64,000 bases of DNA from Gracilinanus agilis. Lineage: Eukaryota. The position numbers and the translations under genes are program-made. The notes under the pieces are model-generated. The model was not told where the DNA came from. It saw nothing but the letters and a program-made list of their open reading frames with translations, and ran no database searches. Position 1 is the stretch's first letter; each line of letters starts with the position of its first letter. The stretch lies in assembly GCF_016433145.1 (NCBI RefSeq), contig NC_058130.1, positions 738,225,051 to 738,289,050 on the forward strand. Direction: 5' to 3'. Shown here piece after piece: positions 1 to 32,840 of the stretch.

Positions 1-1053
<1,053 letters not shown>

Positions 1054-1305
1054 GATGTCCCGTCCTATTCCACGCAAAGGACCACGGCGCCCTCCGGCCC
1101 GAAGGCCCCTGCATTTTGCTTGTTTTCCTTAGCAGGGGAGGCTGGGGAGAGGCGGGAAAGCCCTGATGGCGGTCTAGCTTCTAACACCTTCCGCCTGCGT
1201 CCCTGGCACTGAATGTACGTTGTAGAGTGTCCTTGCTGTATTGTTCACGTGGCCCCTGCAGTCTGTGTGGTGTGTCTGTGTTTTCTAAGAGGCCTTTTAG
1301 TTTGT

Positions 1306-1311
1306 AATAAA
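1306..1311 (+). terminator. Poly(A) signal AATAAA, probable PRR36 3' end
   Basis: Only AATAAA seen shortly after the PRR36 stop (about 250 nt downstream), preceded by a UG/U-rich tract at 1261-1300. Confidence 0.7.
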
Positions 1312-1413
1312 GATGAGCCTGAATGGTAGCTGCGGCGTTCTGAGGGACCCGCCTGTCTGGAACTTCTGTGTCCCAGCTTCTCCCCAGGGGCCCAGGTGTG
1401 CAGCCAAGCCTTT

Positions 1414-1664
1414 TCACTGACGGTGAAGGGGCGGCTGAGCAGGAGAACCGGGCTTTAGGAGCAGGTGTCTTCCTTCCCCCTGGGGGCTCAGGACCCCCAG
1501 GGAGGTGGCAGGAGACTCTGGGAGGCCCGAGGATCCCTGTGAGGGTGGGCGTTTTGGACGCTGGGGCAGGCTCCGGGTGCCCCCATGCTGTCGACAGTGA
1601 GTGAGCAGGTTGGAGCTCTGGCTGAAGGATTTTCCACACACTCCACAGCGATGGGGCTTCTCTC
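1414..1664 (-). CDS. GFI1-like last coding exon (ZF5 equivalent + 56-aa Pro/Ser tail)
   Basis: ctttccacag|GA GAG AAG CCC completes the TGEKP linker; stop TGA ends at 1414. Confidence 0.93.
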
Positions 1665-3107
1665 CTGTGGAAAGGCAGAGAGGAATTTGGAGGAAGTGGG
1701 GGGCTGGGTGAGGACCAGAGGTAGAGATATGGGTCTGGGGAGCAGGGAAACTGAGGTAGGGTGGAGAAACCAGGTGGGAGCCCGGAGAGGCCGAGGTCCC
1801 GAGTCTGGTGGGGCTGGCTGGTGGGGGCAATGAGAACAAGGGAGGGTAATGGATGGGGAGAGGGAGGCCGCCTCGGCCTGGGAGCTTTTCTAACTTCCCC
1901 TCTAAGAGTTGGAGATCTGGGGGGTGGGGGGTGGAGGGGCGGGGCCATCCTTCGGTCACTCCCCTGAGACCTCGCTCCCCAGCCCCCCTCCTCGTCTAGT
2001 CCCCGGCCCGCACCAGTGTGGATGAAGGTGTGCTTCTTCATGTCGGATTTCTGGTGGAAGCGCTTGGCGCAGAAGGGGCAGGGGTGGGGCCGCGTGCCCG
2101 AGTGGATGAGCAGGTGTGTGGACAGAGTCGAGGAGCGCCGGAAACTCTTCCCGCACACGCCACAGGGAAACAGTCTCTCCTGGGGGCAGGAGGGGAGCGG
2201 TGGAAGGCGGGACGAGGCTAAGGTTCCTCCCCTCTCGCCCGCCCCACCCTAGAGGCCCAAGGATGGACAGGGGCTGCGGCTGCACTAGCCTCTGTCCCTC
2301 CGCGCCCGCCCCGGCCCGGCCCAGGCCTCCTGAGTTACCTTGAATCGCTGAGGGGCCTGTGCCGTGGGCGGTGACAACAGTTGTAGCTCTGGACTTGGGG
2401 AAGTGACTCGGGTCTCAGGCCGAGACTGGAGCTGGGGCTGGGGGCAGCGACCATCCCAGGAGAGGCTGACCAGACCCTGGAGCCCTGGGGTTGAGTCAAA
2501 TGAATCCGGTCACTCTGAGCCTCCTAGGACCTAACAGCCAGGCAACCCCTCGAGATCTGGGGGTCTTAGCCCACAATCCTCGGACTTCTGCCTCCCTAGG
2601 CCCAGGGGAGCTCTTACCAAGGAGGCCACCCTCAGAGAAGGCAGGGGAGGAGCTGGCTTCGGGGTCAGGGTCTGGGGATGGGGCCCTCTCAGCCCATTTG
2701 CCTCCAAGGCTCCTCACAGCCAGGGCTGGATCCCCTGTAAAGCCTACACAAGAAGAACCCATCACTTTTTAAGTAGGCCTCAGTCATTCTAGCCCCCTAC
2801 TCTGCTGCAACCCAACCCTCTCCCCTCTCCAGTCCAAGGCATCTTGACTCCTAATTGGTCCCCCCTCACCCTTGCCCATCCTAAACTCTCAAACTCCAGT
2901 CTGGATTTGTCCAGTTATTCTGTCCTTATTCTCTGCTCCTCCACCTTTTTCTCCCTCCAGAACACAGGCATCGGAGTAACCAGCTCTTCCATGGGAGCCC
3001 TGGAGGATTCTGGGGCTCTGGGTCTTCAAAAAGGACAGGCCATACTTACCCATCAACTTTTTTCTTTCGGAGGATCTTCTGCTTCTTACTAGGAAGGATC
3101 GAGGCAT
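1414..3107 (-). CDS. GFI1-family SNAG + three C2H2 zinc-finger repressor (third GFI1 paralog), 245 aa; join complement(3050..3107,2618..2734,2339..2484,2014..2179,1414..1664)
   Basis: N-terminus [11 protein letters not shown] is a SNAG motif. Fingers [42 protein letters not shown] and [21 protein letters not shown] are near-identical to GFI1/GFI1B ZF3-5. Exons of 58+117+146+166+251=738 nt join in frame over four GT-AG introns (phases 1,1,0,1) with no internal stop. Confidence 0.88.
2014..2179 (-). CDS. GFI1-like coding exon 4 (ZF3+ZF4 equivalents)
   Basis: cctgcccccag|GAG AGA ... CAC ACT G|gtgcgg; 166 nt, phase 0/1; same ER...HTG boundaries I recall for the GFI1 penultimate exon. Confidence 0.95.
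2339..2484 (-). CDS. GFI1-like coding exon 3 (linker, ends QRFK)
   Basis: Donor AAG|GTAACT in phase 0, as the next exon requires; the phase-compatible acceptor aaccccag| is weak. Confidence 0.6.
2618..2734 (-). CDS. GFI1-like coding exon 2 (linker)
   Basis: Acceptor ctttacag|, donor TTG|GTAAGA; phase 1/1; open frame DPALAV...EGGLL. No homology support. Confidence 0.65.
3050..3107 (-). CDS. GFI1-like coding exon 1 (SNAG; [20 protein letters not shown])
   Basis: ATG at 3107 with G at -3; donor G|GTAAGT at 3049. Confidence 0.9.
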
Positions 3108-9232: not shown

Positions 9233-9517
9233 TCAGTTACCCAGGCTCTGGCCATAGGAAGGGGCCAGCTCATCGGTTTCACTGTCCGTGCTGCCCTCAC
9301 TGTCCTTGGCTGGACGGTCCAGTCGTCGGAAGAACCGGGCATCTCGCGGGGATAGAGGATATAGGGCATCCTGTAGGGCTGCCCCAACCCCTACACCTAC
9401 GCCCAGGAGCTCCTCATCTGAGGAGGGCAGCGAGTCCTCATCCAGATGACGCACCAAATGGAGGCTGTCGAATGCCAGGGGGTCCTCAAACGGGGGTGGG
9501 CCTTTCAGTAGCCGAAC
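9233..9517 (-). CDS. EVI5L: EVI5L last coding exon (VRLLKGPPP...QSLGN*)
   Basis: 285 nt to TGA. Confidence 0.95.
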   Translation of the reverse strand, partial: VRLLKGPPPFEDPLAFDSLHLVRHLDEDSLPSSDEELLGVGVGVGAALQDALYPLSPRDARFFRRLDRPAKDSEGSTDSETDELAPSYGQSLGN

Positions 9518-12500
9518 CTGGGAGATGGGGAAAGGGGAGGTAAAGGTTAGTAAGGCAGAGCACTGGATGGATCAAAACCCATGTTAGAGGGGAAGATAAG
9601 TTGTGGCCAGGATGAGGTGGGAGATAAAGGGGATGCTAGAGAGGACCGAAGGGGATGGAGATGGAGGAAACAAAGGAAATGACTAAGGGATGAGGAAGGG
9701 AAAGGGAAAAAGAGGGAGGGAGCAAGACCCGCTGGATAGCAGGGGGCACAAAGAGAGGAGAGATGGTTCTCTGGTGGAGAACACAGTGTGGGGTGTTTAG
9801 TACACCATTGAGGCCCACCAGCAAGAGGCTGTTACTGGATTGGAGGGGAAGAAAAGGGGCCAGATTGGGGAGAGGGGGAGGGGGCTCAGGGAGAGGGCTG
9901 GTAAGGTTAGGAAAAGGTCTTCCACCTTACCCCAGCCCTGAGTCACCCAGACACCAGAGCCTGAGGGGGAGGCTCTGGGGGAGGGGGAGTTACCCTGGGC
10001 TCTGATACGGAGGGGTGGCCTGTGGGAGCCTACAAGTCCCAGCATGCAGTGCGTCGCCTCGGTCCAGCTGCCAGCCTGCCCAAGCTGAGAGACTCTGCTC
10101 AGATCAAGACAAGAGTTATGGGGCAGGGAGCTCCTGTCCTGATGTGAGGCTCAGGAGGGGGCCAGAGACACCAGCCATAGGGTGTATGGACCCCAGCCAG
10201 GGAGCCCACACTTTGAAGTCCTGCCTCCTCTTTTCTCTTCCTTTCTCCCTTCCACTCTGACCATGGGGACTTCTCTTCTGCCCTTGTAGGCATCATAAAT
10301 ATGGGGCTCTGGAGGGGGCCAGCTTGTGGAACAGGGTCCGAGAAATAGAACACCTGGGGGGGGTGGAGTCTTTTCCTTGCCTGTCTCCCTCTGCAATTAT
10401 AGGCACAATCCCGTATTTGCTCTGAAGACAACCAGAGCCTCCCAACAGAAAGGAATAGGTGATAATAATGGAAGACAAGTCTTTGGTTTGACATCTTCCA
10501 AGAGCCTTCACCTCCATTATCTCAAGGAGTCCACACAGTAGTAGGGCAGCAGGGATTTTTACTCTATTTTACACATTAGGAAAACTAAGGTTAGGAAAGA
10601 GGAAGGGACTTATTTGCCCATGGTCCCCCACTGAGATAGTGGCAGAGGGAGGACCACAACCCAAATTTCCTGATTTATTAGGCCAGGACTCCTGCCATTC
10701 ATTTTGCCACAGGGCCCATCAACTGTCCAGAGGTTTGGATGAAGGATGCCCTGTTCTCTCTCTGGTCTGCTCAGGAGTAGCTAGAGCACTTGTCAGGAGC
10801 CCTACAACTCATCCCAGGGAAGGTCAGATTGCTCTCTAGAAGACTAGAGGTACTATACTCTTTTTTTTTAAACCCTTACCTTCCAGTTTACAATCATTAC
10901 CATGTATTGGTTCTAAGGCAGAGCAGGAAGGGCTAGGAAACGGGGATTAAGTGACTTGCCTAAGGTCACAAGGCAAGGAAGTATATGAGACCAGATTCAA
11001 ACCCTGACTCTAGGCCTGGCTCTCAATCCTGAGCCACCCACCTGCTGCACTCTACTCCTTTCTTATCACAGTGAATATGGAAGAAACTTCATGGAAATTT
11101 GCCAGGAAGTCCAAGACCCTAGGAATCTCTCCTCTAGTCACATTAGCTTGTTCTCTTGAAATACCAGGGCCCTGGCATAAAGATGGAAGCATGCCAGTAG
11201 AGGGAATGGATGGCTTCTCTTCTTGGAAGACTGGAAGGCAGGTGAGAGAAGCAGTGACTTGAGAAGTCAAACCCCGAGGCAGGCCTGTGACTCACCTCGG
11301 CCTTGAGCTCGTCAATCTGATCCTTGAGCTCACGGATGTACTGGGAGGAGTCTGAGTGGTTCAGCTGCCCCTGGATCATACCTTCTTCTCTCTGTAAGGC
11401 AAAGCGTTCCCATCCTAAGTCACTGCATGGAGAAGAGAAGAAAAAGAAGACGAGGGCTTCCCCACATCAACCTCTTCTCTTTTGTTGAGTCCTCTGACCC
11501 TTGCCTTGGTCCCTCACCTGAATCTCCAGCTCTGCAATTCGCTGCCTCATCTCTGCTACAGCAGCCATGCTGTCTGCCTCCCGGAGCCTTACTGCCATCA
11601 CCTCCTCCTTGCTCTGGAGGGGCAAAAGCAGCAGGAAAGCATAGGCAGCTGACTCAGGGGAGGGAGGGATGGACAGAGGGAGGGGCAGTAGAAAGGGAAT
11701 GGATGGAGGCCCAGCAGACGGGGCTACAGGGTAAGCCCTAGGAAGATGGGGATAGGCCTCAGAGCATGCAGGGAAGCCAGCACAGCTGGGGGCTGGGGGG
11801 CAGAGGCGGGGCCCACCTTACACTCAGCCTCAGCATGCTTGCGTTTGCTCTCACTCAGTTGAGTCTGCAGGCCTTTGTTCTGAGCCACCAGGTAATGGAG
11901 CTTTTCCTGAAGGCCTGCACTCTCTGCTTCTACCCGGTTCAGCAGGTTTCGGTGGATCTGGTCCTAGGAGGAGGGGGAGTCACCAACAAGTGACCAAGTG
12001 GCCCCAGACAATGCAAGGGGGAGCCTAGAGCCAGAAACACGGTCTAACAAAACCAGGTGACCGTTAGCCTGTAACTGCAAGCAAATGAGGGGAGCCGGAG
12101 GCGCAGCCCAGTGGGATTCATGAAGTGCATATAGGGCAAGAGGATGGCCTGGGCTTGGTAGTAGGCTGAAGGTAGGGTGATGACGGGGAACACGGGGACA
12201 TTTCTCATTCTGGGGAGGTTCTCTGACCTGTGTCTCCAGTTCCACCACTCGTTGCCGAAGTTCCCTCCCTTCAGCCAGAGCATGGGCCTCTCGCAACCGG
12301 ACGGTCATCAGTTCATCCTGTAGGTCACTAATGGCCAGTTTCCGGGGAGACTCCTTCCATCTCCCTCCCCGAGAGAGGTGGGCCTATCCATAAGGGAGGA
12401 AGGGTCATTAGGATTTAGAGCCAGAAGAGACCTTAGATGGAAAGATAAGCCTTCTGGAATCTCTATGCAACTCCTAGAGTATGAAATGACTTCTAAACTT

Positions 12501-15500
12501 CTTCCAAATAAGACCCTGTCCTGGGGCTGCAGTACCAGAAAGATGAAAACATAAAGGTGAGAGAGTGGGGGGGTGGCCTCTGCCTGGATTTGTCCTCTGG
12601 GGAGCTTCATGTGGTTGGCCTAACTGGGGCTGTATTTGAGGGTCCTCCCTGTGGAAGCTCCTCACCAATATGAGATGACATTTCTGTGCGCTTTTATGCT
12701 TTACAAAGCATTTACATTATCTCACTGCTTCTCACAACAGCTCTGGGAGGGAGTTAGTGTAAAGCATTTGCACATTTTAAAGAACTATATAAATGTGAGT
12801 TACTTTTATTACTTTAGTCCTCCAGAATATCTGTCATTCGCCACCCCTTGGTAGATAGCTTTATGAACTCAAATCACGATGGGGCCTGACCTGTCCAGGA
12901 GTTTCTTGGACACTGGCTAAGCTGAATTTCACACCATTCTCTGGTACAGGTACAAGTAAGGAGATAAGAGGCCTGGCTAAACTCACTCACTCACTCACTC
13001 TCTCTTTCTCCCCTTTCCTTTCTTCCTCCTTTTCCCCCTTTCTTCCTTTATTTCTTTCTTTCTGTCTTCCCTTACCTTCTGTCTTAGAATTGATACTAAG
13101 TATTGGTTCCAAGGCAGAAGGGTGGTAAGGGCTAGGCAACTGGGGGTAAGTGATTTGCCCAGGGTCACACAGCTATAACTAGATTTGAATAGGCAATAGT
13201 TTCCAGGAAGAAGGGGGAATGGGGGCTAAGGGCCAAGATAAGACAAGCACTTGTCCAGAACGAAGGTGCCCATTGCTTCACTGTCTCTTGCCCTGGTCAG
13301 ACCCCATCTGGAGGACTGTGGTCAGCCCCAGAAACCATATTTTAGGAAAAATGTTGAAAAAGTTGAAATGCATCCAGAAAAGGGTGCCTGGAAAGCTGAC
13401 TAGATTAGAAACCATGCTATACTTGGTTCAGCTAAAAGAACTGGGATTCTTACTTGGAGAAGAGAAGACATGTGGGAGACATTAGTGATCTTCAGTGATT
13501 TAAGATGTCATCAGAAAAGAGGGATTAGACTTATTTTTTTTTAAACCCTTAACTTCTGTGTATTGGCTCCTAGGTGGAAGACTGGTAAAGGTGGGCAATG
13601 GGGGTCAAGTGACTTGCCCAGGGTCACACAGCTGGGAAGTGTCTGAGGCTGGATTTGAACCTAGGACCTCCTGTCTCTAGGCCTGGCTCTCAATCCACTG
13701 AGCTACCCAGCTGCCCCTAGACTTATTTGACCCCAGAGGGCAACAATGGAAGGAAACTGCAAAGGAGTACTTTTAGGCTTGACATAAGGAAAAACTGTCC
13801 AACAATTAAAGTTGCCTAAAGTGGAAAGGGCTGCTTGTCATGTTCCTTAATTTTCTTTTTAACATAGCAAATTGCTCTCAAGAAAATGACATCTTGTAAT
13901 GGGGAATGGGTTCCCCTTCTCAGGAAGCCTTGGGTTGTAGACTTAATTACATGGAAAAGCAGCAGTGTACAGGGGATTCCTGTTCATACAAGGATTGACA
14001 AAATGGCCACTGAGATTGTGAGATTCAACAGACATGGAGTCTGCAGCCAGATTCCCCCCTCCAACCTTCTCTCTAGCTTGGCAGGAACTGCTAGAGCTTG
14101 CTCAGCCGGCACAGCCTTCTGGAGGCTGGGGACAGCTCTACCCTCTTGAGGAGTGCTAGAAGAAGACTCTCTCTAATGGAGTGAACACTGTTAGCCTCGT
14201 GTTAGCCTCAGGAAAACCCAGGCTCAAGAGAGAAAATGGTGTTGCCCACATGACAAGGAAGTGGCAGGGATATCACCTGAACTCGGGTTTCTTGACTGCC
14301 AGTCCAGGACAGTGCAATGCACCAAAGAAAGAGGGAAATCCTTCCAGGGAGGCCTGGGGCTCTTGCTGCTCTCACCTGCCAGCTGTCTGTGAGTTCCTGC
14401 ACCTGCAGTTTCAGCTCTCGAAGAGAGGCCACGGCCTCACTTTCCCGAAGTTTGAGACCTTTAAGTTCCTCCTGTAGTCGGGCCACATTGTTCTCATCAG
14501 GAAGTGAGTTGTTCCTCTAGGAAGGGCAGCAGGTGGAATAGTCAGTCAGTTCCAGGTGGAACAGTCCTACACTACCCCAACCAATGAAACTCTCCCCAGC
14601 TCCCTAGCTAGGTTCCACAAGCAACCATTCAGGAAGTGGCAACCACTGTTATTTAGGGAACACTTTAAAGTTATATGGTGCAGGGGTGACCATGTTGTCT
14701 CTAATCCATCCACTCTAGTGGGTCTCTACATTGCCTCCAGGATCAAATAGAAAATCCTCTTTGGCTTTATAAGCCCTTTAAAACTTCATCCCTTCCTACC
14801 TTTCCAGCCCTCTTATACCCGACTCCCTCCATGAACTCTACAATCATGTGACATGCTTCATTTTTGTTTTTCAAACAAGACACTGTCTCTTTCTTTTGCC
14901 TAGTGATTTCCCTGAAGTTTCAGCTAAAATCCCACCTTATACAAGAAACCTTCCCAATCCCCCTTAATACCAGTACCTTCCCTCTTTGGATTCTTTCCAA
15001 TCTATCCTTTCTCTATCTTGTTTGTACAAAAGGTGTTTGCACATTGTTTCCCTCTTTAGATTGAGTTTTCTTGCAGGGTGGATTTGTTTTTTGCCTTTGT
15101 ACCCCCAGTTCTTAGGAGGTGCTAAATAAATGCCAGTGATTTGATATTACAAAGTGCTTTCCCTCCAATAACCCAGTGAGGCAGGTAGTACAAGTAAGGA
15201 CATCACAGTTTGTCTTCCTTCCTTCCTTCCTTAAACCCGTATCTTACATCTTAGAAACAATACTGTGTATTGATTCTAAGGCAGAAGAGTGGTAAGAGTT
15301 GGCAATGGGGGTTAAGTGACTTGTCCTGGGTCTAGCCCACAACCAGGAAGTGTCTGAGGCCAGATTTAAATCTAGGACCTCTGTCTCTGTCTGCTCTCAA
15401 TCCACCGAGTCACCTAGCTGCCCCTGACAATTTTTCAGTGGGGGAAATAGAGGTTCAGAGAAGTTCTGATATGTCTAAGGTTGCAAAACAAGCAAGTGTT

Positions 15501-15989
15501 GGAGCCAGACTTTGAAAGGTCTCCTCACTTTATGACCAAATCTCTTCCCGATACACTATAGTCATCAAGAGTTTTCCCTCAGTGATAGGAAATTCCTTCT
15601 GTTCATTAAATCTCCTACTCTGCAAAATTATAGCCCAATCCCTTTCCCCTTGTTCAGATTTCTGTGTAGAGGAAACCTTAAGACATTAATATAAAATTTC
15701 TTTTTATTGACCCCCAAATAGCCTTGCACAATATCCATCATGCTAAGAAAGGTCCAGGTGTGGAGGCAGAGCCAATCATAGTTACATTCTGATTGATATC
15801 GAGAATGAGTGACATCAGATCACTATACAAATGGCTGTGGGGAGGATTCTAAAAGCACTCATTTTAGAGCAGTAGGAGAAGGGCTCCAAGTTTTGATGCA
15901 GGTAGGGAGTAGGTGAAGGAGAGGCAGGGTATATTCTAATCTTCTTCTCTCTAGATCAGTGGTTCCCAAACTTTTTTGGTCTACCACCC

Positions 15990-16061
<72 letters not shown>

Positions 16062-19000
16062 AAACCCTTAACTTCTGTGTATTGACTCCTAGGTGGAAGA
16101 GTGGTAAAGGTGGGCAATGGGGGTCAAGTGACTTGCCCAGGGTCCCACAGCTGGGAAGTGTCTGAAGCCAGATTTGAACCTAGGACCTCCTGTCTCTAGG
16201 CCTGACTCTCAATCAACTGGGCTACCCAGCTGCCCCTGTACCACTCCCTTTCCAGAAAAAAACATTACTTAGCGCCCCTGGAAATTAAATTTTTAAAATT
16301 TTAATAACAATTAATAGGAAAGATAAATGTACCTGTGGCCATCACTGCTCCCTTGGATCGCTGCAGCACCCACCAGGGGGTAGTGGTGTCCCCTTTGGGA
16401 ATCACTGCTCTAGATGAAAGGGCACTTCTTACAGGGCCTTTTTGGCCTCCTCTAGGGTGGAGGGCTAAATCAATAACTTGAGGAGGAAGGGACTGGTCTA
16501 CTATAGAAGGTATCTAAAGAGGAATTGATTCCTGCTCATTAGCAAGCTCCAGTTTGGAGAGTGAAGTCAATATGAAACTAACTGGGGTGAGAGCCATGAT
16601 TTCTGGCCCCTGCTCTTCTTGCTTCTCTGCTGTCTATGTCAGGGCAGGAAATAAGCCAAATACATCCTGCCTCTCTACTTTAAAGAGAAGCCCCTCTAAG
16701 TTGAGGCTGAGGTGGAGAACTCATAAGGTTGGCCCTAGCTTCGTATATACTGCTCAAATTCGGCAGAGGAGGCAGGGTCTCCGGGGCCCACAATGACTTT
16801 AGCCTTCTGAATGGCTGGCATATTCCAAACAGCAGTTCCCATATTTTCTTGCGTCATTGAAAACACACAAGACACCATTAGGAATATGTTTAGCCCAAGG
16901 TTCTTTTCTATCTGAATAGGAGCCTTGAAATGAAAGATAAGCCAAATCTACAAGCAATGCCCAAGAAAGAAGAACACAGAAGGAAAACTAGACTTGGGGG
17001 TAAATCTGGCTTGTAATCATTATAAAAATTGCAATGATCAAACTGATATTTATACATCATTTTAAAGTATTCAAAGCACTTTCTGCATGTTATTCCATGG
17101 AGCCTCACCACAACCCTATAAAGGAAGGTTTTATAGGTGAAGAAACTAAGGCTCAAAGAAGATCAGTAACACACATAGCCATGCTAGTGTTTGAATTGCT
17201 ATTTGAACGCAGGCCTAATTGCAAGTCCAGCACTTGAGCTGATACATCACAAAGTAATGTTTAAGCTGGCTCTGCTTCTGAAAATGGCCCTTTCCTTAGT
17301 TGAAGACTGGTATCTCTAACCCATCTCCTCATCAGATGGCCCACAGGAGTATTTCTGCCCAGAGACACGATTTGTGTGTCTCTCTCCATGCTGTGGACAC
17401 AGAACGTGATCACAAAGAACTGACTTTTTTGGGACTGCATTTCCAAGTATGGGCCTCACTGCTTTAGAGCCAAATTTTTTATGCAATAATTTATATGTTG
17501 TGTGTATATGTGTGTAGTTCATTTGTCTACAAGTCTCTATGCACATATATATGTAGAAAGTTGGGGTATAGGAGGGGAAGGGAAGGAAAAAGTATGCCAC
17601 CTGCCTTTCTCCCAAGTCATACTGGTAATGATAACTAAGCTATTTACCCAGTGCTAATGTAGAAACAACGTTTTAGAAAAGTCTGTTTGCATAACTATCT
17701 GGAGAGAGGAGGCTTGTGTAGGAGATAAGACACTTAAGCTTTTCAGCTTCACATTTTCTACCTCTATAAAACAAGGGATTGGACCAAATGACCTACGTGG
17801 TCAGAGTGGCAGAATCGTCAGCAGCAAAATCCCTTGATTCTGTATGTAACAGGACTGGGGATGAATGTACAGATATGAGACTTTCTTCATGTCTTTGCTA
17901 AAGCCCCTCCTTTTGCAAGAAGCCCTTCCTAGCCCTCTTTAATCTCAGTGTCTTTCTGCTGAGACAATCCCTAATTTATTTTGTATGTATCTTGTTTGCA
18001 CATAGTTGTTGTCCTGTCATCTTCCCTATTAGACTGGCAGCTTCCGGAGGGTAGGGACTGTCTTTAGCCTTTCTCTGCATGCCCAGTGCTTAGCACAGAG
18101 CCTGGCACATAGTAGGTGCTTAATGCCTGCCAACTGACTGACAGGCAAGTACTTGGAGATCCTCAGATAACTTTGTGGAAGATGATCCCAAAGCCTTGTA
18201 TACTGTTTCCCTGGGCGATAGTCTGGTTCTATAACTATATCTCTAACCATCATACCTTCAGTCTAAAGGCAAAACCAGACATCTGGTTTCTTGGCCACAG
18301 GCCTTAATTCTCCCATTTCAAGACTAGAAATAAGATCTGGGTATCTGGTCTTTCTGTCCAGGGCCCTGACTACCCACCTCAGATTTGGGAATAGGATTCA
18401 CGCATTAGAGCTTTCCACCCAGAGCCCATATCCCTATTTCTGGGGCTAGAAAGGGTGATTTAGACATCTTTTTACTCTGTTCTGTGCCAGTTCTGCCTCA
18501 GATCTGAGAAAAGGATCCAGATATCTGGCCTCTCTGTCTTTGTACCTCAACTCTCTAAATCCAAGTTCTTTTTTCTATTCTTCTTCAGTTCCGGGGTAAT
18601 GGTTCTCAGTACTCTCTGGGGGCCTCTCTCCTAGCACTTGGAGGCAGGAAGGAAATGGTGTGTGTTGGGAGGGTGGTGTTGGTGATGGTGGTAGGAGGGT
18701 TTTAGGCTCATGACTTAGAAGGTACCACAGATAACACATTTACCAAGGTTTGCAGAGTGGAGACTGACCACAGGGGAGAGGAAAGCCAGAGAGGAAAACA
18801 AGGTGGCGGTGGTATGGCAGTGGAGGGGAGGAGAGGCGGGGTAGTGGCACTGGAGGGTAGTAATATAGGAAAACCCAGAGGTTTGCTCTGAAGCCACAGA
18901 AACATAGCTATTTTGGGGAGGGTAGCTTCTGTCTTATCCTATCCCATGTCATCCAACAAAATCAACTGCTATGCTAAGGTAAGGAAGATGAGTAGGCTAC

Positions 19001-22000
19001 AAAAAAATAGTTGGCAAAGCCTTTGGTCCTCTCCAGATCCACCTTTCTGTTTGCTAGTTCCAAGGTACCCCTCTTCCTCATGGGCCCCACCTTCTCCATG
19101 TCCAGGACTTTGTCCTGCATTTCCCGAAGGGCACTTAGGGTCTCTGTCTCCCGCATTCGAGACTGCTCCAATTCTGTCTCCAGGTGGGCCACAAACTCTT
19201 CTGTCAGACGAGGGTTATCCTGCAAGGGATAAAACATATGATAGGGTAAGATAAGAACCTTCAGCTATATTCCTAGCGGTGTAGAGTCCAGAATAAATGA
19301 GGCAAGAGTTCTGATGGTTTTTGCTTTTTTTTTTGACTAGGCATCAGTTTTGAGGAAGGTTATTATTTTGAGGAAGGTTATTAAGCATGTAGAAAGAAGG
19401 CTGGCCAAAATAATGAGGTTACTGATGAAGACTGGTTGAAAGAATGGGAGAGTCAGCCTGGAAAAGAGCAGGTTTAGGGGAGGGTAAGAGCACTGTCTAC
19501 AAATCTATGAAGGGTGATCACAAAGAGGAGGGAGATTTCTTCCACTTCTCCCCAGAAGGCAGACCTAGGAGAAATTTATAGAAACTGCAGAGAGGACTAT
19601 TTTAGGGTTAGGGAAAATTTTCCTAATGCTTTGGGAGCTATCCCAAAGTGCAAGGGGCTGCTTTGGGAGCTCTCTCTGAGTGCACATCAAATGGAAATTA
19701 GTTGATCTCTTGTTGGGAATTGTGTAGAGGTGATGCTTGCTCAGGCACAGGCTGACTTCTGAAGTCTTTCCATGTCAGAGACCTTCGGGATCCCAGTTTT
19801 TGGTCATTTCTCCTTTTGGGGCCTCTGGACGTTCTCTAGAACCAGATGCTAGGCCTTGAAATGTAACTCTGGGCATTTATTGCCGATTCTAACTTTTCAA
19901 CCTGTGCCTCTGCCATCTGTGCTCAGTTTCACCACAACCTGTTTGGGGGCCAAAAGGGGGAAATAAAGTATATGCAAGTGGTAGGAAGTATAGAATTATC
20001 ACCTCGTCAACTGAACTAAGAAAACTCAGCTGATCAATCAATATTTATTAAGTACCTCCTATATGCTTATGTGTTCTATATTAGCATATTCTACATTAGC
20101 ATAGTGCCAGGCTAGTGTTAAGTATTGGGGGTACAAAAAGAGGCAAAAGACAGTCCTTTCCCTCAAGGAGATTACAATCTAAGGAGGAAGATAATTTTGT
20201 GTATGTACATAACTATATCTATGCAAAGAAATTTATACAAAGCAAGCTATACATAGGATAAACGGAAATAATTAACAGGGGACAGGGAAGCTAGGTGGCT
20301 CAGTGGATAGAGTCAGGACTGGAGATGGGAAATCTTGGATTCAAGTTTGGCCTCAGACATTTCTAGCTGTGTGACCCTGGGCAAGTCACTTAACCCTATT
20401 GCCTAGCCCTTGCCATTCTTTTGCCTTGGAACCAGAACACAGTTCTGATTCTAGGACAGAAGGTAAGGTTGTTTTTTTTTTTTTTTTTGTTTGTTTTTTT
20501 TTAAAGATAGAACGAACTCAAGTGGTAAGGAAGACAACCTGATAAAACATCAGATTCACAAGGGACATTCTGGAATAGCAGAAATAATTCTCCCTCCACA
20601 ACTGAACTTGCTTGGAAAAAATAGATAAATCAAATTGGGAGAAGCTTGATTTCCTTCAAATTTTTTCCTAATATCTGTGGTACCTACCCCATAGGGCTGT
20701 AGTGAAGATCAAATAAAAAAAATGGATGTGGAGTGTTTTATAAACTTGGAAGCTCTATGGAAACATTGGCTCTTATTACTCAGTTGGTGATGTTTAAGTA
20801 CTTAATAGAGTATAATCACTTAAATGTTTTCTTTCCCCTATTCTACTCCACCCTATATCTCCTTTCCACCTTTCTCTTGTTCCCATAGTTTCTCTCAGTT
20901 ATGAGTTCCAGGGTTCCCCCTTAGGGCCTTTCTAAAATCTGTTTCCTCTTGCCATAACAGAAATTTAACCCATTTCCTCATGTCTTTTGCTACATTCCAC
21001 TTTCCATATCATATACATCTGAGGCTGTTAGAACTAGAAAGGATCTTAGAGGCCATCTAATCCCTGCAATGTAGGGATGAAGAAGGTGAAGAAGCCCAGA
21101 GAGATTTATGTGAACTGTCTTGAGGCTTGAGGACCTTTGTGCCTCTCACCTCCTACCAAACTATTTCCAGGCTGAATCATCCTTGCTCTTTTAACTTTTA
21201 CTAAAACCTTCTTTTTCAGATGTTTAGTCTCACTAGCTTGTGTGCAGAACAGCCCCTAGGCCTTTCCTGTTTATACCAGGAACTGTAGAATAGAAGACAA
21301 CAGCTCGTTTTTTACCTTGCTAAAGCTTTATTGTGAGAAAAAAGTTAACAGATTCCTCCAACAGGGTGTTCTGTTAGCTCCAGAGTGAAGGCAAACATAA
21401 CCACAAAATGGAGAGGAACGGAGGTTGAGGGGAAGAAGTCTGAGTGGGGAGGAAGGAACCGTTGTGGGGTTTGTTCTGCAGCTGTTGACTGTTTATCAGA
21501 TAAGAAAAGAATCAGAAGCTGGAAGGAACAGGACAAATGCTTCCCTGTGACTAAGGGGGACTCCACAGCAGTCCTCTAAACTTAACACACACATACACAC
21601 AGGCTATAGTGGTGAGAAATATTTTCCTTCTTGAGAGCCAGAGGTCCTGGATTCTAACCCAGATATCCTGATTTAAAAGCCCCTACTTTTAACCTCAGTT
21701 GCTACTCAGAACAGAGGAGATACTAGGCCAAGGATGAGTTAGACCAGATTCATAATTTGGCTAATTGTCATAATTTTGGTTAGTATGGCTTGGTTGATCT
21801 AGATGACCTCTGAAATCCCTTCCAACTCTAACATTCTAAAACTCGAATCCTCTGCAACCACATATCTCCCAGAGTCCTAATTTTGTCCTCCAGATCTGAC
21901 CTGGCTGCCTCCATTTAAAGCTCTTTACAGCTCTGCCTCTTCCTATCTTAATAGTCTTCTCTTTTACTCCTTCCCCTCCATGTACTCTACAAGCCAGTAG

Positions 22001-25000
22001 CATTGGCCTTCTTATAGGTTGTGATTCTGACTGTCTCTTCTGCCTAGAATGCTCTACTGACTCATCTTTGCCTCTTGGCTTTCCTGGTTTCCTTCAAGAC
22101 TCACTTCAGATGCCATTTCCTGCAGGAGGCCTTTCCTGGTGCCTTCCCCTGACCCCAAGCCTCAACTACTAGTGCCTTCTCTCCAAAATTACCTTCCATC
22201 TACTCTGTATGTACTTTGTGGATGCATGGTTATTTAATGTTGCCTCTCCCATTAGAATGTAAGCTCCCTGAAGGAAAGGGATTGTGTTTTTTGCCTTTCT
22301 TTTTATCCCCAGGGCTTAGCACAGCATCTGGCACACAGTAACTACTTAATAAGTGCATCTGGGTAGGACCACATATATTCCTGTCCTCTAGCTTTGCCTC
22401 ATTTGCATATTAACTGACTAAATACCTAGTTCCCTATCCAGGCCTCACTTCATCTGAAGCAATGGCCATGAAGAAACCTGATGTGAAGAAATGGAAAAAA
22501 TGATTTTGTCTCCAATTAGAAGGATACTTCATTTGTTCCTGTTCATAAAGAATCAAAGGCCAGGTCAAAGGTCTTGGGGGAATATAATCTTTTTCTAGGG
22601 AAAGCATCAGCACCGTGGCAGGGAAGCCCAGCTCTTCTATTTGCTCCCTAGTACTAGGTTATACTCAAATTAAAGATCAAATGAAATAACAGGTAAACAC
22701 TTTATAAACCTTACAGTTCTATTATTAGTTATTGTTAACTATTATTAGCTGTTGTTATGTAGCTGCTTCTTAGAAAAGGAAACTCAGAAACTAAAGCTCT
22801 AATCTCTTTATGTCTCTCTCTTACACATACACACCATAAATATTTAGTTGATATTTAGCTTGGGTGGGTCTCCTTTGCCTCCAATTGTAGGATCCATATG
22901 TGTTAGCCCATTCTTTGCATATCTTGTCCATACACTCCAATATATTTTCTATAAGGGATTCTCTTAACATTTGGGGGTGGTGGGGTGGTCCTCCTTTGGA
23001 ACTCTTGACATTTAATGGATCTCAATGGAGCAGGACAACTAATCATTATAGGATAATTTCAATCTGGATGGGATTTTAGTCATGAATTTCAGGTAGTCCA
23101 ATAATTCTTAAATTGTCCTGGATCTGTTTTCCAGGTCAGTTGGTTTTTCTTCAATGAGTTATTTCATATTTTCTTCTATTTTTTCACTCTTTTAATTTTG
23201 TTTTATTGTTTCTTGATATCTCGTGAAGTCATTAGCTTCTATTTGCCTAATTCTAATTTTTAAAGACTGAATTTATTCCATGACCTTTTGATCTTCCTTT
23301 TCCATTTGACCCATTCTACTTTTCATGTACTCTTCACTGGATTTTTTTACCTCTTTTTCCAGTAGGTCAATTCTGTTTTTTAAAAAACTCTTTTCTTCAT
23401 TGGATTTTTTTGCCTTTTTCCAGTTGATCAATTTCATTTTTTAAGCTGTTTTCTTTTTGCATTATTTTAATTTCTTTCTCTCATTGTATTCCCATTTTTC
23501 TTTGACCTATCTTATTTGATTTTTGAATTCTTTTTTGAGTTCTTCCAGAGCTTGAGATCAATTCCTGTTTTTCTTTGAAGTTTTGCATGTGGTTGTTTGG
23601 ATCTCACCATCCTCTGTTGGTTCTGTGCTTTGTTCTTTGTCCCCATAGAGATTTTTGAGGGTTAAGTGTTCCTTTTGCTGTTTACTCATTTTCCCAGCCT
23701 TTTTTTTGCCCGTTTACTGGGAATTCTGAAAGCTAATGACTCTGTCTCCTTTGCTCCTACCTTGCAGGGATTAGCACTGTGAATTATTTTGATCTGGGGC
23801 TAGATCTTCACCACAGCAGCTTGAAAGGGCCCAGCACTATGGACTTCTGGGTCTCACTCGGTCTTCAAGGGGTGGGTCTGAAGTGTTCTTATGTTGGTGT
23901 AGTCCATGTCTTGGGATCCTGAAGCTAGCCTATGTCCAGTTGCAGAACCTGGCATGGTGGGGATGGGGGGCGGTGTGGGAATTAGCCAGCCCTCCTCGGT
24001 GTTCAGTTTTGCTTCTGGTTCCCCCTTATCCCATGAAAATCCACTCTCTCTCACCTTTCAAGTTATGTTCATTGGGAGAGCTCCCTCCCTCTGTCTTGCT
24101 GTTGGTTTTTGACTCCTGTTGTTTTGAAGCACTTCATAAAGATTAGTTTGAAAAGATTGTCAGAGAGGTTTCAACTTTCAATGCTAAGGCCCCTGGAGAG
24201 GACTTTAGAAATCATCCGACCTGTTCATTTTGCCAGATGACAAAAGAAGCCCTGCTTTCTCTAAGTAACTTGTCCAAGGTCACATAGAGACTGAGTAGCA
24301 GAGCTGAGATTTGAATCCAGGTCTTCTGAATCTAAATTCAGCACTTTATCCACTGCACCATACTGCCTCAATTATCTTTGCCAATTCCTATATACCGAGC
24401 CCTATTCTTTTTCTGGTCATAGATCTCTCTGTTGTAATCCATTTACCCTGTTTTTTCTTGTGGGAAATTCTTCATTAGTAATATGTTATAGCCTACTCAT
24501 GCCCATTATGCATCATTCTATTGCCCTTTGGGTGACTCTCAATTTTAAATCTTTAGAGACTGTGGTATTCCATGATTCACTACCACACAGCAAGAGTAGA
24601 GGAAGAATGATGCTCTAATGATGGGCAATTGTTTCAGGGAGAAGCTTTGAGTCATTATATAAACACTGCACATTTTTCCAAAGACATGCATCTCAGACTG
24701 CTCCCCTTCTCTTTTCAAATCTGGGCCTGGCTTATGTTCCATCCACAGAGTTTGTCCAAGACACTATGTATTGATGGGTTAGTTCTATGTTTTATCCATT
24801 TAACTTTATATCCTAGCTAAACAATAGGCATTCTTAATCTACTTAGTTTTTCCTATATGGATATGAAACAAGTTGAATACTTGAGTGATTATGACTCTCA
24901 CTGAGGAGGCTCTGAAATTTTTTGACTTTGATGAAATTGGAACAATGTCATCCGCAACAAGGACATTTGGAAGCTCCAACCAAATATAATGAATCCCTCT

Positions 25001-28000
25001 TCCAATTGAACTCTGTGCTGGCTGTCCTGCATGATGATTTCAAACACTAGGATGATCATGTTATTTTATGCATCATTTGATATGAATCATCAGAGATTTG
25101 AACAATTCGCTCACTGTTACATCTTTTGAGGAAACGTGAATGAATTTGACATATGCATGGGAGCTACATTGTTGGAATAGGACCTTTCAGGTGGCATTTT
25201 GTTGCTCCATATCAAACAATAAATAAGGTGATCTTGAATTTTAGACTGTCAATTCTTGGCCATTTACACTGTGTGTGAGTATATGTGCACATATGCTCAA
25301 TGACTACTTAGTCAACTATAAAGATGTGGCTTAGAAAATATCATTGGTGAAAGTCAGCTTGTTCTCTTCTCAAATCTTCAAGGATTCTCTTGATACTTGT
25401 GTATATTCTTCTCCTACAGATTTTGTAGAGCTGGTAATATGGATACAGTTACTAATATTTTCTCAGATGTCTTTTTTTGGGGGAATACAGTCTAGGATTT
25501 TTCTAAGCCTTTGGCACCTAATCTTTTAAGTGTCTTGAAAATCAATCCTTCAGTACTTTCAGAATTGTATCACCTGCACAGATGTCCTCTGTACAAATTT
25601 CTAGTCTACCTGTTCTTTTGTCTTTGTTTTTACTGTCATTTCTGCTTCTTTATGTAGTAACTTATGTAATAAGGGCCTGAGATATCAAGAATCCAAGTGT
25701 GGTAGCTCCATTACCATTAAAGAAGAGTTAGTGATAGAAATCTTAACAGATATTTTCCATTTTTTGTCCATTTATTGTCCTTTTCAATTTCATTCTTAAC
25801 TGTTCTCACTAAGATGGCTCAGTTTAACTTCCCACCAAACTTTCTGTAAACATATTTTTCTTTTTACTGCTTCTCCTTGTTTTGTGAAACAATATTGCTC
25901 ATAATTATTGCACCATTTTCCTCTGTATGATTTTATGAATGAGTTTGGATTTTAAGCAGACGTTACTCTGAGGTATAAAACCTTTCTTTGGTGAAGAAAT
26001 CGAGGTTTGCTGATTGAGGGAGTTTCTAGGAGGGAGGCTGAGGGAGTCTCCTGTTCCCCTTGCTGTCACAGTAACTGATTTACATCAGTTAAACTTCTTC
26101 AGGAAATAGTGACAACTAGTGTTGATTCTGTTCTTTGATTAATTTCCCATTTTATTCTGTCAGCGGCCTATTTAAATAAATCAGGTTAGACTCTGTGTTA
26201 GAGGCTTCTCATTTTTTTTCTTTCTTCTAACATGGTCCTGATTTTGACTTTTGTGCTAACAAATTGATGGTCTGGCTGTTCATACAGATGATTTGGAAAT
26301 GACTCAACGCAGGTAACCTGTGTTTTTCTGTCTGTTAAAATATAATCAGTTCCATTTTTGTGATGTATTTGGCACAGGCTTGTTCAATACTTCCTGACTG
26401 TCTTCTCAAAGAAAGTTTTTGATATATTATTATGTCTTCTATATAATCTATAACTCTTTGGCTGTTTTCATTTCTCACTATTAAACCATGTTTTCCAAAT
26501 GTTTTTTTCCCCATCTTCTCCATGTCTACTTAATACAAAGTATTAAAATATGTGAAAATTTAATTGAGGGGAGTTCTTATTAAGTTGATAGATTTTTTCT
26601 ATTTCATCAACATATATTGATATATAAACTATAATTATTTTAATGACGCCTTCCTGCAAATGTTTATCATGAGTATAATACAAGATCAAATATCTCATGA
26701 AATGATATTTCTTGTTGTTTTTGTATACATAATTAACTTTTTTATTTGCTTCTCCAAGGAAAGGCTATGAGCTATCACCTAATTGACTTCCTTTGTCTTC
26801 TTTTTTTTTTTAAACCCTTACCCTCTGTCTTGGAGTCAATACTGTGTATTGGCTCCTAGGTGGAAGAGTGGTAAGGGTGGGCAATGGGGGTCAAGTGACT
26901 TGCCCAGGGTCACACGGCTGGGAAGTGTCTGAGGTCACATTTGAACCTAGGACCTCCTATCTCTAGGTCTGGCTCTCAATCCACTGAGCTACCCAGCTGC
27001 CCTCTTCTTCTTCTTTTTTAAATTAAAACCCTACCCTAGCATTCTGGAATCAATACTGAGTGTTGGTGTCAAGGCAGAAGAGTGGTAAGGACTAGGCAAC
27101 AGGGATTAAGTGACTTGCTCAGGGTCACACATTGAGAAAGTATCTATGGCCACATTTGAAAGTAGGTCCTCCCATCTTTAGGCCTGGCTCTCAATCCACT
27201 GAGCTACCCAGCTGCCCCCTTCCTTTGTCTTCTGGATTCATTTAAGTTAATGGTTATAGGTGGTCTAAAAGCTATGTGATTCTTTGCATCCTCTTCTCCC
27301 TTTTCTACCATTCTGCCACTAAAAAAGTAAAAGGTGGTTACATGGGGGCCGAGGGACATTTAAATTTTTTCTTTGTTTCATGGGTTGTTGTAGCAAAAAG
27401 ATTCATTATCAAGTGGCCAAACTACTGGCCAACCAACTCCAATAAAGCCTCTGAATTTAGCTAGGTTGGTCCCCGGAAATTAGACAGTCAGCATTTAATT
27501 CCTTTCCAGGGTGGGTAGATCCTGTCAGAACTTATGCTCTGCTGACACACTTTTTGAATTAATGAATAAAAAAGCATTTCTAAAGTACCTATTAGATGCA
27601 AAGCACCATGCTAATGCTGGAGATATAAACAGAAAAGGTAAACCAGTCCTCTCTCACATTCTCATGTGAAGGTTCCAGTTGCAAGTCTGAGGGAAAGGAC
27701 TTGTGGGGTGATGCCAAAGCAGGTAGTGCTGCGTCTTCTTTCATGCCACTTCTACTGATACAGCCACGGCCATTTTTGATGTTAAGCCATTTAACAATGC
27801 CAAGGACTTTGGTGTTGAAATTTTGTTTCCCATATATGCAGTTGTGGTTGCTGAGGAGGGGGCAGTGGCACTTTTGCAGAAGCAGATGTCAGGCCACATC
27901 TCCACAAAGGCTGTTTCCCAGGATGCTGGTTGAGGGGTTAAGGCAGGATAGGGCAGAAGGGAGAAATAGAACCAGTGGTCTGAAATTGCTGCCACTCCTG

Positions 28001-32807: not shown

Positions 32808-32840
<33 letters not shown>

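What the first reader, a model, noticed from the sequence alone, without database searches (positions are those of the whole stretch)
1585..2339. Only the DNA-binding fingers are kept: a hard-wired short-isoform (GFI1B-p32-like) architecture
Seen: the recognition helices RSSTLST, QKSDMKK and QSSNLLT match GFI1 ZF3-5, including the Asn equivalent to GFI1 N382. Exon 3 ends in K at phase 0 and splices directly to the ER... exon across a 159-nt intron with no finger remnant. Known: ZF3-5 suffice for AATC-core binding, ZF1/2/6 serve protein contacts, and GFI1B p32 arises by skipping the phase-0 exon that builds ZF1-2. Inference: the gene has genomically fixed that skipped state. It should bind the same sites as GFI1/GFI1B but lack their finger-mediated partners, acting as a minimal repressor or competitor.
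Basis: partly seen in the sequence, partly recalled or inferred. Interest (0 to 1): 0.82.

Follow-up and report, generated by a model that had tools for sequence, protein, structure and literature searches.

The report
Three-finger GFI-family repressor gene in marsupials
This opossum gene is a real, spliced and conserved third relative of the blood-cell regulators GFI1 and GFI1B that keeps only the repressor tag and the three DNA-reading zinc fingers, a natural "minimal" version found in marsupials and platypus and not described in any paper I could find.

Summary
On the minus strand lies a 5-exon, 248-aa gene: a SNAG exon ([11 protein letters not shown]), two Pro-rich exons, a 166-nt exon (fingers equal to GFI1 ZF3-4), and a last exon (ZF5 plus a non-finger tail). 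Exon 3 ends QRFK in phase 0. It joins the ER... exon across a 159-nt GT-AG intron that holds no finger trace.

- **Transcription:** spliced RNA contigs from a related species show exactly this junction.
- **DNA-contact residues:** all 12 canonical base-contact positions equal those of GFI1.
- **Source:** the window is Gracilinanus agilis.
- **Orthologues:** devil, wombat, glider, dunnart and platypus have the same three fingers. Alligator and turtle keep ZF3-6. Teleosts keep ZF1 plus ZF3-6.
- **Position:** every locus read (Gracilinanus, devil, platypus, alligator, goby) lies just downstream of EVI5L.
- **Phylogeny:** the group forms one clade, sister to GFI1.
- **Selection:** the fingers are under strong purifying selection (dN/dS 0.03-0.10). 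The tail, a decayed ZF6, is near neutral.

The architecture reading is therefore right, but the loss was stepwise. ZF6 is also gone, so the protein is smaller than GFI1B p32. AATC binding and repression are inferred, not shown. Automatic annotation already lists the gene under misleading names, and no paper was found. The scan's earlier notes concern this same stretch, not other DNA.

The parts
3050..3107 (-). Coding exon 1 (58 nt, phase 0>1): SNAG-type N-terminus [19 protein letters not shown]
   Evidence: RNA contig X22 record 11 covers 3049-3117, and loose ends join it to exon 2 and to exon 3. The same exon is conserved but unannotated in platypus and alligator.
2618..2743 (-). Coding exon 2 (126 nt, phase 1>1): Pro/Ser-rich linker. 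It is skipped in a minor in-frame isoform.
   Evidence: X22 contig 10 and the loose ends at 2744 and 2485.
2339..2484 (-). Coding exon 3 (146 nt, phase 1>0): Pro/Gln-rich linker ending QRFK
   Evidence: X22 contigs 8 and 10. The devil orthologue has a 143-nt exon with the same phases.
2180..2338 (-). Intron 3, 159 nt, GT-AG, phase 0. It occupies the position of the intron before the ZF3-4 exon in all GFI genes and holds no finger remnant.
   Evidence: three-frame translation. tblastn. Joint 2178>2338 in RNA. The intron is 152 nt in devil and 197 nt in platypus.
2014..2179 (-). Coding exon 4 (166 nt, phase 0>1): fingers equivalent to GFI1 ZF3 (2164-2102) and ZF4 (2080-2018)
   Evidence: The 166-nt exon is identical in length in GFI1, GFI1B and every third-lineage gene model mapped over it.
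1665..2013 (-). Intron 4, 349 nt
   Evidence: RNA joint skipping 349 nt.
1585..1664 (-). Start of coding exon 5: linker plus the finger equivalent to GFI1 ZF5 (1647-1585). The helix is QSSNLLT, with the Asn equivalent to N382 at 1611-1609.
1414..1584 (-). Rest of exon 5: a 56-aa non-finger tail (an in-frame, decayed ZF6) and the stop codon (1416-1414)
   Evidence: The alignment places it opposite ZF6 of alligator, fish, GFI1 and GFI1B. dN/dS is 0.87. Pfam finds no finger there.
1..1053 (+). End of the convergent neighbour gene (PRR36-like), whose C-terminus is a BTBD8_C domain
   Evidence: Pfam PF15363, E = 1e-20. The same neighbour is present in sugar glider and devil.
9236..33317 (-). Upstream tandem neighbour EVI5L (its C-terminal exons lie within this span). 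It ends about 6.1 kb before the SNAG exon.
   Evidence: RabGAP-TBC and EVI5 Pfam families. Collinear tblastx with the upstream genes of alligator, platypus and goby.

Best explanation
This is a functional third member of the GFI1/GFI1B family of SNAG zinc-finger transcription factors. It is an old vertebrate paralogue that always lies just downstream of EVI5L, as GFI1 lies downstream of EVI5. In monotremes and marsupials it has been reduced to two constrained modules: the N-terminal SNAG peptide, and the three fingers that correspond to ZF3-5. These are joined by a fast-evolving Pro-rich linker and followed by a decayed ZF6.

**Shown here**
- The gene model and its splicing in RNA.
- Conservation of the gene and purifying selection on the fingers.
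- Identity of all canonical base-contact residues with GFI1/GFI1B.
- Absence of ZF1, ZF2 and ZF6.
- Stepwise loss of fingers across vertebrates.

**Inferred**
- The protein binds the GFI consensus with the AATC core, through ZF3-5.
- It recruits LSD1/CoREST-type corepressors through SNAG and represses targets.
- It lacks whatever contacts ZF1, ZF2 and ZF6 provide in GFI1 and GFI1B.
For: **Gene model and RNA**
- Five GT-AG exons encode 248 aa.
- Spliced RNA contigs from a relative show all three 3' junctions and the exon-1 joins, with no intron coverage.

**Fingers**
- Identity to GFI1 over ZF3-5 is 79%, with identical recognition helices apart from I>L at helix position +5 of ZF5.
- The retained region is co-extensive with PDB 2KMK, the Gfi-1 ZF3-5 construct.
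- ZF3-5 are the AATC-binding fingers (PMC5368270). The N382S change abolishes DNA binding.

**Exon structure**
- Exon phases and the 166-nt ZF3-4 exon are shared with GFI1B and GFI1, which carry an extra 138-nt phase-0 exon.

**Orthologues and architecture**
- The same three-finger architecture occurs in five other marsupials and platypus.
- ZF6 is still intact in alligator and turtle, and ZF1 in teleosts.

**Synteny and phylogeny**
- EVI5L lies upstream in Gracilinanus, devil, platypus, alligator and goby.
- The clade has support 89/85 and is sister to GFI1.

**Selection**
- dN/dS on ZF3-5 is 0.10 against devil, 0.026 against platypus and 0.08 against alligator.
- The N-terminal part gives 0.76 and the tail 0.87.
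Against: - No binding, repression or partner data exist for this protein.
- GFI1B p32, the nearest known architecture, did not repress and even raised reporter activity in Meg-01 cells (PMC8719102).
- SNAG position 8 is Arg rather than the Lys of GFI1/GFI1B.
- RNA evidence comes from assembled contigs of one run of a related species. A large run of another relative (X1) held only unspliced sequence, so expression may be low or tissue-restricted.
- The absence of the gene from eutherians, which would explain why it is unknown, could not be tested with the tools available.
Confidence: 0.72

Rival explanations
1. The end state is the same but the route differs. The ZF1-2 exon was not deleted or skipped. 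It decayed in place into Pro/Gln-rich coding sequence and was merged into what is now exon 3, so the roughly 30 residues before K|ER would be its remains. On this view the 'fixed exon skipping' picture is only an analogy.
For: - Loss is graded in relatives. The exon is 117 nt in goby with ZF1 kept and ZF2 gone, and 102 nt and finger-less in alligator.
- Platypus has a 107-nt exon in that position with weak GLE and ...AC..G echoes of ZF1 and ZF2.
- The distance from a relic His-Cys to the ER junction falls from 51 (GFI1B) to 44, to 39, and to 34-36 aa in mammals.
Against: - The marsupial phases 0>1, 1>1, 1>0 match the three upstream exons of GFI1 and GFI1B exactly.
- Exon 3 carries an S-x-S-W-D motif like the GFI1B exon that precedes the ZF1-2 exon, and it ends in K|gt as that exon does.
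- No local alignment of the linker to any ZF1-2-derived exon beats shuffles convincingly. The best z is 3.3, and that hit is to the upstream exon.
- The alligator 102-nt exon has no counterpart in turtle DNA.
Confidence: 0.3
2. The protein binds GFI sites but is a poor repressor. It would act mainly as a competitor or modulator of GFI1 and GFI1B occupancy, as reported for over-expressed GFI1B p32.
For: - p32, which lacks ZF1-2, abolished repression and raised reporter activity on GFI1, GFI1B and MEIS promoters (PMC8719102).
- ZF1, ZF2 and ZF6 are credited with protein contacts (PMC5368270), and all three are missing here.
Against: - The SNAG exon is conserved from fish to marsupials. It is present though unannotated in platypus and alligator. 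This argues that corepressor recruitment is still selected.
- Established literature, recalled rather than checked here, describes p32 as required for erythroid differentiation, so loss of ZF1-2 does not equal loss of function.
Confidence: 0.2
3. The locus is a transcribed but functionless remnant on its way to becoming a pseudogene.
For: - The linker and tail evolve almost neutrally (dN/dS 0.76 and 0.87).
- Three of the six ancestral fingers are gone.
- Only weak RNA evidence was found.
Against: - Open reading frames are intact with canonical splice sites in six marsupials and platypus.
- 79 of 83 finger residues are identical between opossum and platypus, with dS 0.9 and dN/dS 0.026.
- SNAG is conserved.
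Confidence: 0.04
4. A ZF1-2 exon exists but was missed, as an alternative exon or assembly artefact, so the three-finger form is only one isoform.
For: Only short-read contigs were available. One alternative isoform, which skips exon 2, does exist.
Against: - tblastn finds no ZF1 or ZF2-like sequence anywhere in the 64 kb.
- The window has no N.
- Introns are only 133-349 nt, and their translations show no finger pattern.
- The junction is seen directly in RNA.
- The devil gene has the same structure.
Confidence: 0.03

Closest known systems
GFI1B short isoform p32 (284 aa, skips the 138-nt ZF1-2 exon)
   Same: - SNAG N-terminus.
- No ZF1-2.
- The upstream exon ends in Lys at phase 0 and joins directly to ER-F-C of ZF3 (P0282; PMC8719102).
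- Recognition helices of ZF3-5 match, apart from I>L at helix position +5 of ZF5.
   Different: - p32 is an alternative splice product of a six-finger gene. Here the state is constitutive and genomic.
- p32 keeps the ZF1 CxxC knuckle and an intact ZF6. This protein has neither.
- The linker is unrelated.
- SNAG reads RSRR instead of KSKK.
GFI1 (422 aa) and GFI1B (330 aa), the six-finger SNAG repressors
   Same: - SNAG start MPRSFLV.
- 79% identity over ZF3-5, with all canonical base-contact residues identical.
- The same 166-nt ZF3-4 exon and the same exon phases.
- Tandem position downstream of an EVI5-family gene. The EVI5-GFI1 adjacency is established knowledge. The EVI5L linkage is shown.
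   Different: - Three fingers instead of six.
- A separate clade.
- Not reported in the GFI literature, which lists two vertebrate members (PMC5368270).
EVI5L-linked GFI-like genes of other vertebrates, auto-annotated as 'Gfi-1b-like', 'ZNF836-like', 'ZNF358-like' or 'ZNF48-like'
   Same: They are orthologues, sharing one clade, the same upstream neighbour (in the loci read), the same 166-nt exon (in the models mapped over it) and SNAG.
   Different: - Teleosts keep ZF1 and ZF3-6.
- Alligator and turtle keep ZF3-6.
- Only platypus and marsupials are down to ZF3-5.
Gfi-1 ZF3-5-DNA NMR construct (PDB 2KMK)
   Same: The 82-residue construct that was solved as the DNA-binding unit aligns end to end with the finger block kept here.
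   Different: It is an engineered fragment of rat Gfi-1. Here nature supplies the same block with a SNAG tag.

Membership tests
GFI (Gfi/Pag-3/Senseless) SNAG zinc-finger family | N-terminal SNAG motif MPRSFLVK-like at residue 1 | tested here: met
   [11 protein letters not shown] is encoded at 3107-3051 and spliced to downstream exons in RNA. It has K8R and KK>RR changes.
GFI (Gfi/Pag-3/Senseless) SNAG zinc-finger family | Fingers with the family-specific helices RSSTLST / QKSDMKK / QSSNL(I/L)T in consecutive C2H2 units | tested here: met
   The best database matches of the finger exon are all GFI1 or GFI1B, at 82-88% identity.
GFI (Gfi/Pag-3/Senseless) SNAG zinc-finger family | Six C-terminal C2H2 fingers (the vertebrate GFI1/GFI1B definition) | tested here: not met
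   Only three fingers by Pfam and pattern. No ZF1, ZF2 or ZF6 by tblastn.
GFI (Gfi/Pag-3/Senseless) SNAG zinc-finger family | Shared gene structure (166-nt ZF3-4 exon, phases) and common descent | tested here: met
   Exon maps. The tree places it in a vertebrate clade sister to GFI1. Paralogous synteny of EVI5L and a BTBD8_C-domain gene.
GFI (Gfi/Pag-3/Senseless) SNAG zinc-finger family | Binds TAAATCAC(A/T)GCA-type AATC sites and represses through LSD1/CoREST | not testable with these tools
   Inferred from identical contact residues and the retained SNAG. No experiment was possible.
GFI1B p32-type architecture | Lacks ZF1 and ZF2, with an in-frame junction into ZF3 | tested here: met
   QRFK|ERLFPC across the 159-nt intron.
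GFI1B p32-type architecture | Retains ZF6 and the ZF1 CxxC knuckle | tested here: not met
   The tail after ZF5 has no Cys/His finger pattern in Gracilinanus. There is no CxxC before the junction.
GFI1B p32-type architecture | Produced by alternative splicing of a six-finger gene | tested here: not met
   No ZF1-2 exon exists in the locus. The same holds in devil.

The most novel reading that the evidence does not exclude
Vertebrates ancestrally had three GFI genes. On this reading the EVI5L-linked one was stripped step by step: ZF2 went first, then ZF1, then ZF6. In early mammals this left a SNAG plus ZF3-5 core, and the gene was then lost in eutherians, which would explain why mouse- and human-based work never saw it. 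In marsupials and monotremes it would act on the same AATC sites as GFI1 and GFI1B, as a partner-independent repressor or competitor. That would add a third layer to GFI-controlled cell-fate decisions.
Probability: 0.35. Interest if true: 0.75.

Novelty: new variant of a known kind. Interest (0 to 1): 0.62.

Why it matters
GFI1 and GFI1B are master regulators of blood, inner-ear and gut secretory lineages, and are disease genes. What fingers 1, 2 and 6 do is still unclear.

A naturally selected family member that keeps only SNAG and ZF3-5 is a ready-made test of what the DNA-binding core plus the corepressor tag can do alone. Those fingers have been under strong constraint since the split of monotremes from marsupials.

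It also shows that the vertebrate GFI family has three ancient members, not two. The third one is hidden in annotation under unrelated ZNF names. This matters for orthology tables, and for interpreting GFI-motif occupancy in marsupial, reptile and fish data.

Tried and rejected
- **First homologue search.** It listed only six-finger GFI1 and GFI1B, because summed multi-finger scores hid the true three-finger orthologues. A search using the ZF5-plus-tail region found them.
- **Exhaustive profile search of 1.84 billion representatives.** It was swamped by giant poly-zinc-finger proteins. It said nothing about further orthologues or about eutherians.
- **RNA run searches.** No run held more than 8% of the sampled words. 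Only one small run of a relative (X22) gave spliced contigs. Run X1 gave only unspliced sequence.
- **Scan for the GFI consensus AAATCACWGC in the window.** It gave 16 matches against 8.8 expected, none near the gene's 5' end. There is no evidence of autoregulatory sites.
- **Local alignments of the Pro-rich linker to ZF1-2-derived exons of relatives.** They do not beat shuffled controls, so deletion and in-place decay stay unresolved.
- **Alligator 102-nt exon.** It has no DNA counterpart in turtle, where an assembly gap sits just before the ZF3-4 exon. The gap was left unfilled.
- **DNA not served.** None was returned for the Gracilinanus and sugar-glider records, and the wombat protein was not on record.
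- **Paper searches for a third GFI paralogue.** They found nothing relevant.
- **Pseudogene and hidden-exon readings.** Both were considered and rejected on conservation, dN/dS and the RNA junctions.
Full report
**1. What is in the sequence**

The minus strand between 3107 and 1414 carries a compact five-exon gene.

| Exon | Window coordinates | Length | Content |
|---|---|---|---|
| 1 | 3107-3050 | 58 nt | Starts [19 protein letters not shown], a SNAG-type N-terminus |
| 2 | 2743-2618 | 126 nt | Pro/Ser-rich linker |
| 3 | 2484-2339 | 146 nt | Pro/Gln-rich linker, ends QRFK |
| 4 | 2179-2014 | 166 nt | ERLFPC...IHTG, two C2H2 fingers |
| 5 | 1664-1414 | 251 nt with stop | A third finger, then a 56-residue tail with no finger pattern |

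- All four introns (306, 133, 159 and 349 nt) are GT-AG.
- The exon phases are 0>1, 1>1, 1>0, 0>1.
- The product is 248 aa.

**2. Check of the observation**

- The three helices read RSSTLST, QKSDMKK and QSSNLLT.
- Against a GFI1 protein, the block is 79% identical over 85 residues. Every position -1, +2, +3 and +6 is unchanged. The only helix difference is Ile>Leu at +5 of the third finger.
- Counting from the shared C-terminus, the Asn in QSSNL is residue 382 of a 422-aa GFI1. N382S is the known mutation that abolishes DNA binding.
- The 159-nt intron has no CxxC or HxxxH in any frame. Reading through from exon 3 meets a stop after 17 codons.
- tblastn with whole GFI1 and GFI1B against the full 64 kb finds only the SNAG exon and the ZF3-5 exons.
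- The window contains no N.

**3. Is it a real, expressed gene?**

Reads laid on 1250-3350 show the following.

- Run X22, an RNA run of a close relative, has contigs that cover exons and not introns.
- Its joints skip exactly 159, 349 and 133 nt.
- Loose ends tie exon 1 to exon 2. In a minor form they tie exon 1 directly to exon 3, which is an in-frame skip of exon 2.
- So the K|ER junction exists in mature RNA, with no extra exon.
- A large run of another relative (X1) held only unspliced sequence, so expression is probably low or restricted.
- Run X24 holds the stretch almost letter for letter as DNA. It may be the source of the assembly.

**4. Identity**

The second homologue search returned a 100%-identical Gnomon protein of Gracilinanus agilis named 'zinc finger protein 358-like' (P0121). 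That model misses the SNAG exon and uses a different 3' end.

Orthologues found:

| Species | Annotated name |
|---|---|
| Wombat | Gfi-1b-like |
| Tasmanian devil | ZNF836-like |
| Sugar glider | ZNF836-like |
| Dunnart | uncharacterised protein LOC141561443 |
| Brushtail possum | ZNF48-like |
| Platypus | Gfi-1b-like |

All have the same three fingers, and a tail of the form HG-x-RPLP... in place of ZF6.

The devil gene has exons of 58, 132, 143, 166 and 206 nt, with a 152-nt intron at the same place.

**5. Relatives outside mammals**

- Alligator and green turtle proteins of the same kind keep four fingers, ZF3-6.
- Their SNAG starts read [12 protein letters not shown]. The alligator SNAG exon is present but unannotated.
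- Gobies, cyprinids, tuna and other teleosts have SNAG, a ZF1, no ZF2, and ZF3-6.
- Some fish gene models join the ZF1 CxxC-K knuckle straight to ER..., exactly like GFI1B p32 (P0305, P0308 and P0234 compared with P0282).

**6. Exon maps**

| Gene | Coding exon lengths (nt) |
|---|---|
| Platypus GFI1B | 100 / 132 / 251 / 138 / 166 / 179 |
| Gar GFI1 | 112 / 201 / 395 / 138 / 166 / 179 |
| Goby third gene | 226 / 83 / 117 / 166 / 179, counting from the SNAG Met |
| Alligator third gene | ... / 203 / 102 / 166 / 194 |

- The 138-nt phase-0 exon that builds ZF1-2 is the one skipped in GFI1B p32, giving p.Val171_Gln216del (PMC8719102).
- That exon is shortened in fish and finger-less in alligator.
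- It is absent as a separate exon in marsupials.

**7. One lineage, old, and linked to EVI5L**

- A gene with RabGAP-TBC and EVI5 Pfam families lies upstream on the same strand in Gracilinanus and devil. An EVI5-family gene holds the same position in platypus and alligator.
- Its C-terminal exons are collinear and 54-100% identical between the window, alligator, platypus and goby.
- Downstream and convergent lies a gene ending in a BTBD8_C domain.
- The goby locus also has TRAPP and mucolipin genes nearby.
- From established knowledge, GFI1 lies next to EVI5, with RPAP2 and BTBD8 nearby, on human 1p22. The gar GFI1 locus shows RPAP2. The two regions therefore look like duplicates.
- A maximum-likelihood tree of the finger region puts all 16 'third' sequences in one clade (89/85), sister to GFI1 (88/81).
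- Within that clade, alligator groups with the mammals (99/93), and platypus with the marsupials (100/94).

**8. Selection**

| Region and comparison | dN/dS |
|---|---|
| ZF3-5, Gracilinanus vs devil | 0.10 |
| ZF3-5, vs platypus (79 of 83 residues identical, dS 0.9) | 0.026 |
| ZF3-5, vs alligator | 0.08 |
| N-terminal 108 codons | 0.76 |
| Tail | 0.87 |

- Within the N-terminal part, the SNAG peptide itself is conserved.
- The constrained parts are therefore SNAG and the three fingers. The former ZF6 drifts.

**9. How it most likely works**

*Shown:* a conserved, spliced gene for a protein with SNAG plus ZF3-5.

*Inferred, with three supports:*
- ZF3-5 are the fingers that bind the AATC motif (PMC5368270).
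- The solved Gfi-1 DNA-binding construct 2KMK is co-extensive with the block kept here.
- All contact residues are identical.

The protein should therefore recognise GFI sites.

From recalled knowledge, SNAG recruits LSD1/CoREST, and SNAI1's SNAG also carries Arg at position 8. Repression is therefore the likeliest activity.

Without ZF1, ZF2 and ZF6 the protein should lack the contacts credited to those fingers.

One caution applies. p32 failed to repress in reporter assays, so a competitor or modulator role is a live alternative.

**10.

- The architecture is not strictly p32-like. ZF6 and the ZF1 knuckle are gone too.
- The loss was progressive across vertebrates.
- Whether the mammalian state arose by deleting the ZF1-2 exon is open. 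I favour deletion for three reasons: identical phases, an S-x-S-W-D motif in exon 3 as in the exon preceding ZF1-2 in GFI1B, and a terminal K|gt.
- The alternative is in-place decay with fusion into exon 3.
- Linker alignments are not significant, and a turtle assembly gap blocks one comparison.

**11. Novelty**

- The GFI literature describes two vertebrate members.
- Five literature searches found no description of a third.
- Automatic annotation already lists the proteins, but under unrelated ZNF names.
- No eutherian orthologue appeared among the annotated proteins. Eutherian genomes could not be searched, so eutherian loss is an inference.
- Earlier notes of this scan flagged the same gene and its SNAG on this same stretch. 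Their claim about the PRR36 and EVI5L neighbours was checked here and holds.

Noticed in passing
window 2765-1068 (minus strand): The public Gnomon model for this gene (P0121, 'ZNF358-like') starts at an ATG inside intron 1, so it misses the SNAG exon. It also splices the tail to an extra 3' exon at about 1187-1065. That places its 3' end just downstream of the stop codon of the convergent PRR36-like gene, inside that gene's presumed 3' untranslated region.
   Followed up: partly
window 2485 and 2744 (run X22 loose ends): Two exon-1 junctions are seen in RNA: exon 1 to exon 2, and exon 1 directly to exon 3. Skipping the 126-nt exon 2 keeps the frame and would give a 206-aa isoform.
   Followed up: partly
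L001:9632-9707 (platypus) and L002:9754-9829 (alligator): Conserved SNAG exons ([11 protein letters not shown]... and [12 protein letters not shown]...) lie a few hundred bases upstream of the annotated starts of the 'Gfi-1b-like' models. Those public models are therefore truncated at the N-terminus.
   Followed up: partly
proteins P0305, P0308, P0234 (teleost models): Some fish members of the same lineage are modelled with the ZF1 CxxC-K knuckle joined straight to the ER... exon. This is the same junction as in GFI1B p32. Loss or skipping of this exon may recur in the lineage.
   Followed up: no
window 1-1053 (+) and the neighbours: The convergent neighbour ends in a BTBD8_C domain. Together with EVI5L on the other side, this mirrors the BTBD8 ... 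GFI1-EVI5 region of human 1p22 (recalled knowledge) and suggests a duplicated chromosome block.
   Followed up: partly
window 1592-1641 (run X24 record 13): A separate 713-nt DNA contig of the source-like run matches only the ZF5 helix region, with 7 differences in 50 bases. It is probably the ZF5 exon of the same animal's GFI1 or GFI1B.
   Followed up: no
teleost proteins: Acanthomorph fish seem to carry two sub-types of the third lineage. One has an intact ZF1 and starts MPRSFLVKRGG. The other has only the CxxC knuckle and starts MPRSFLVKSKR. They may be duplicates from the teleost genome duplication.
   Followed up: no
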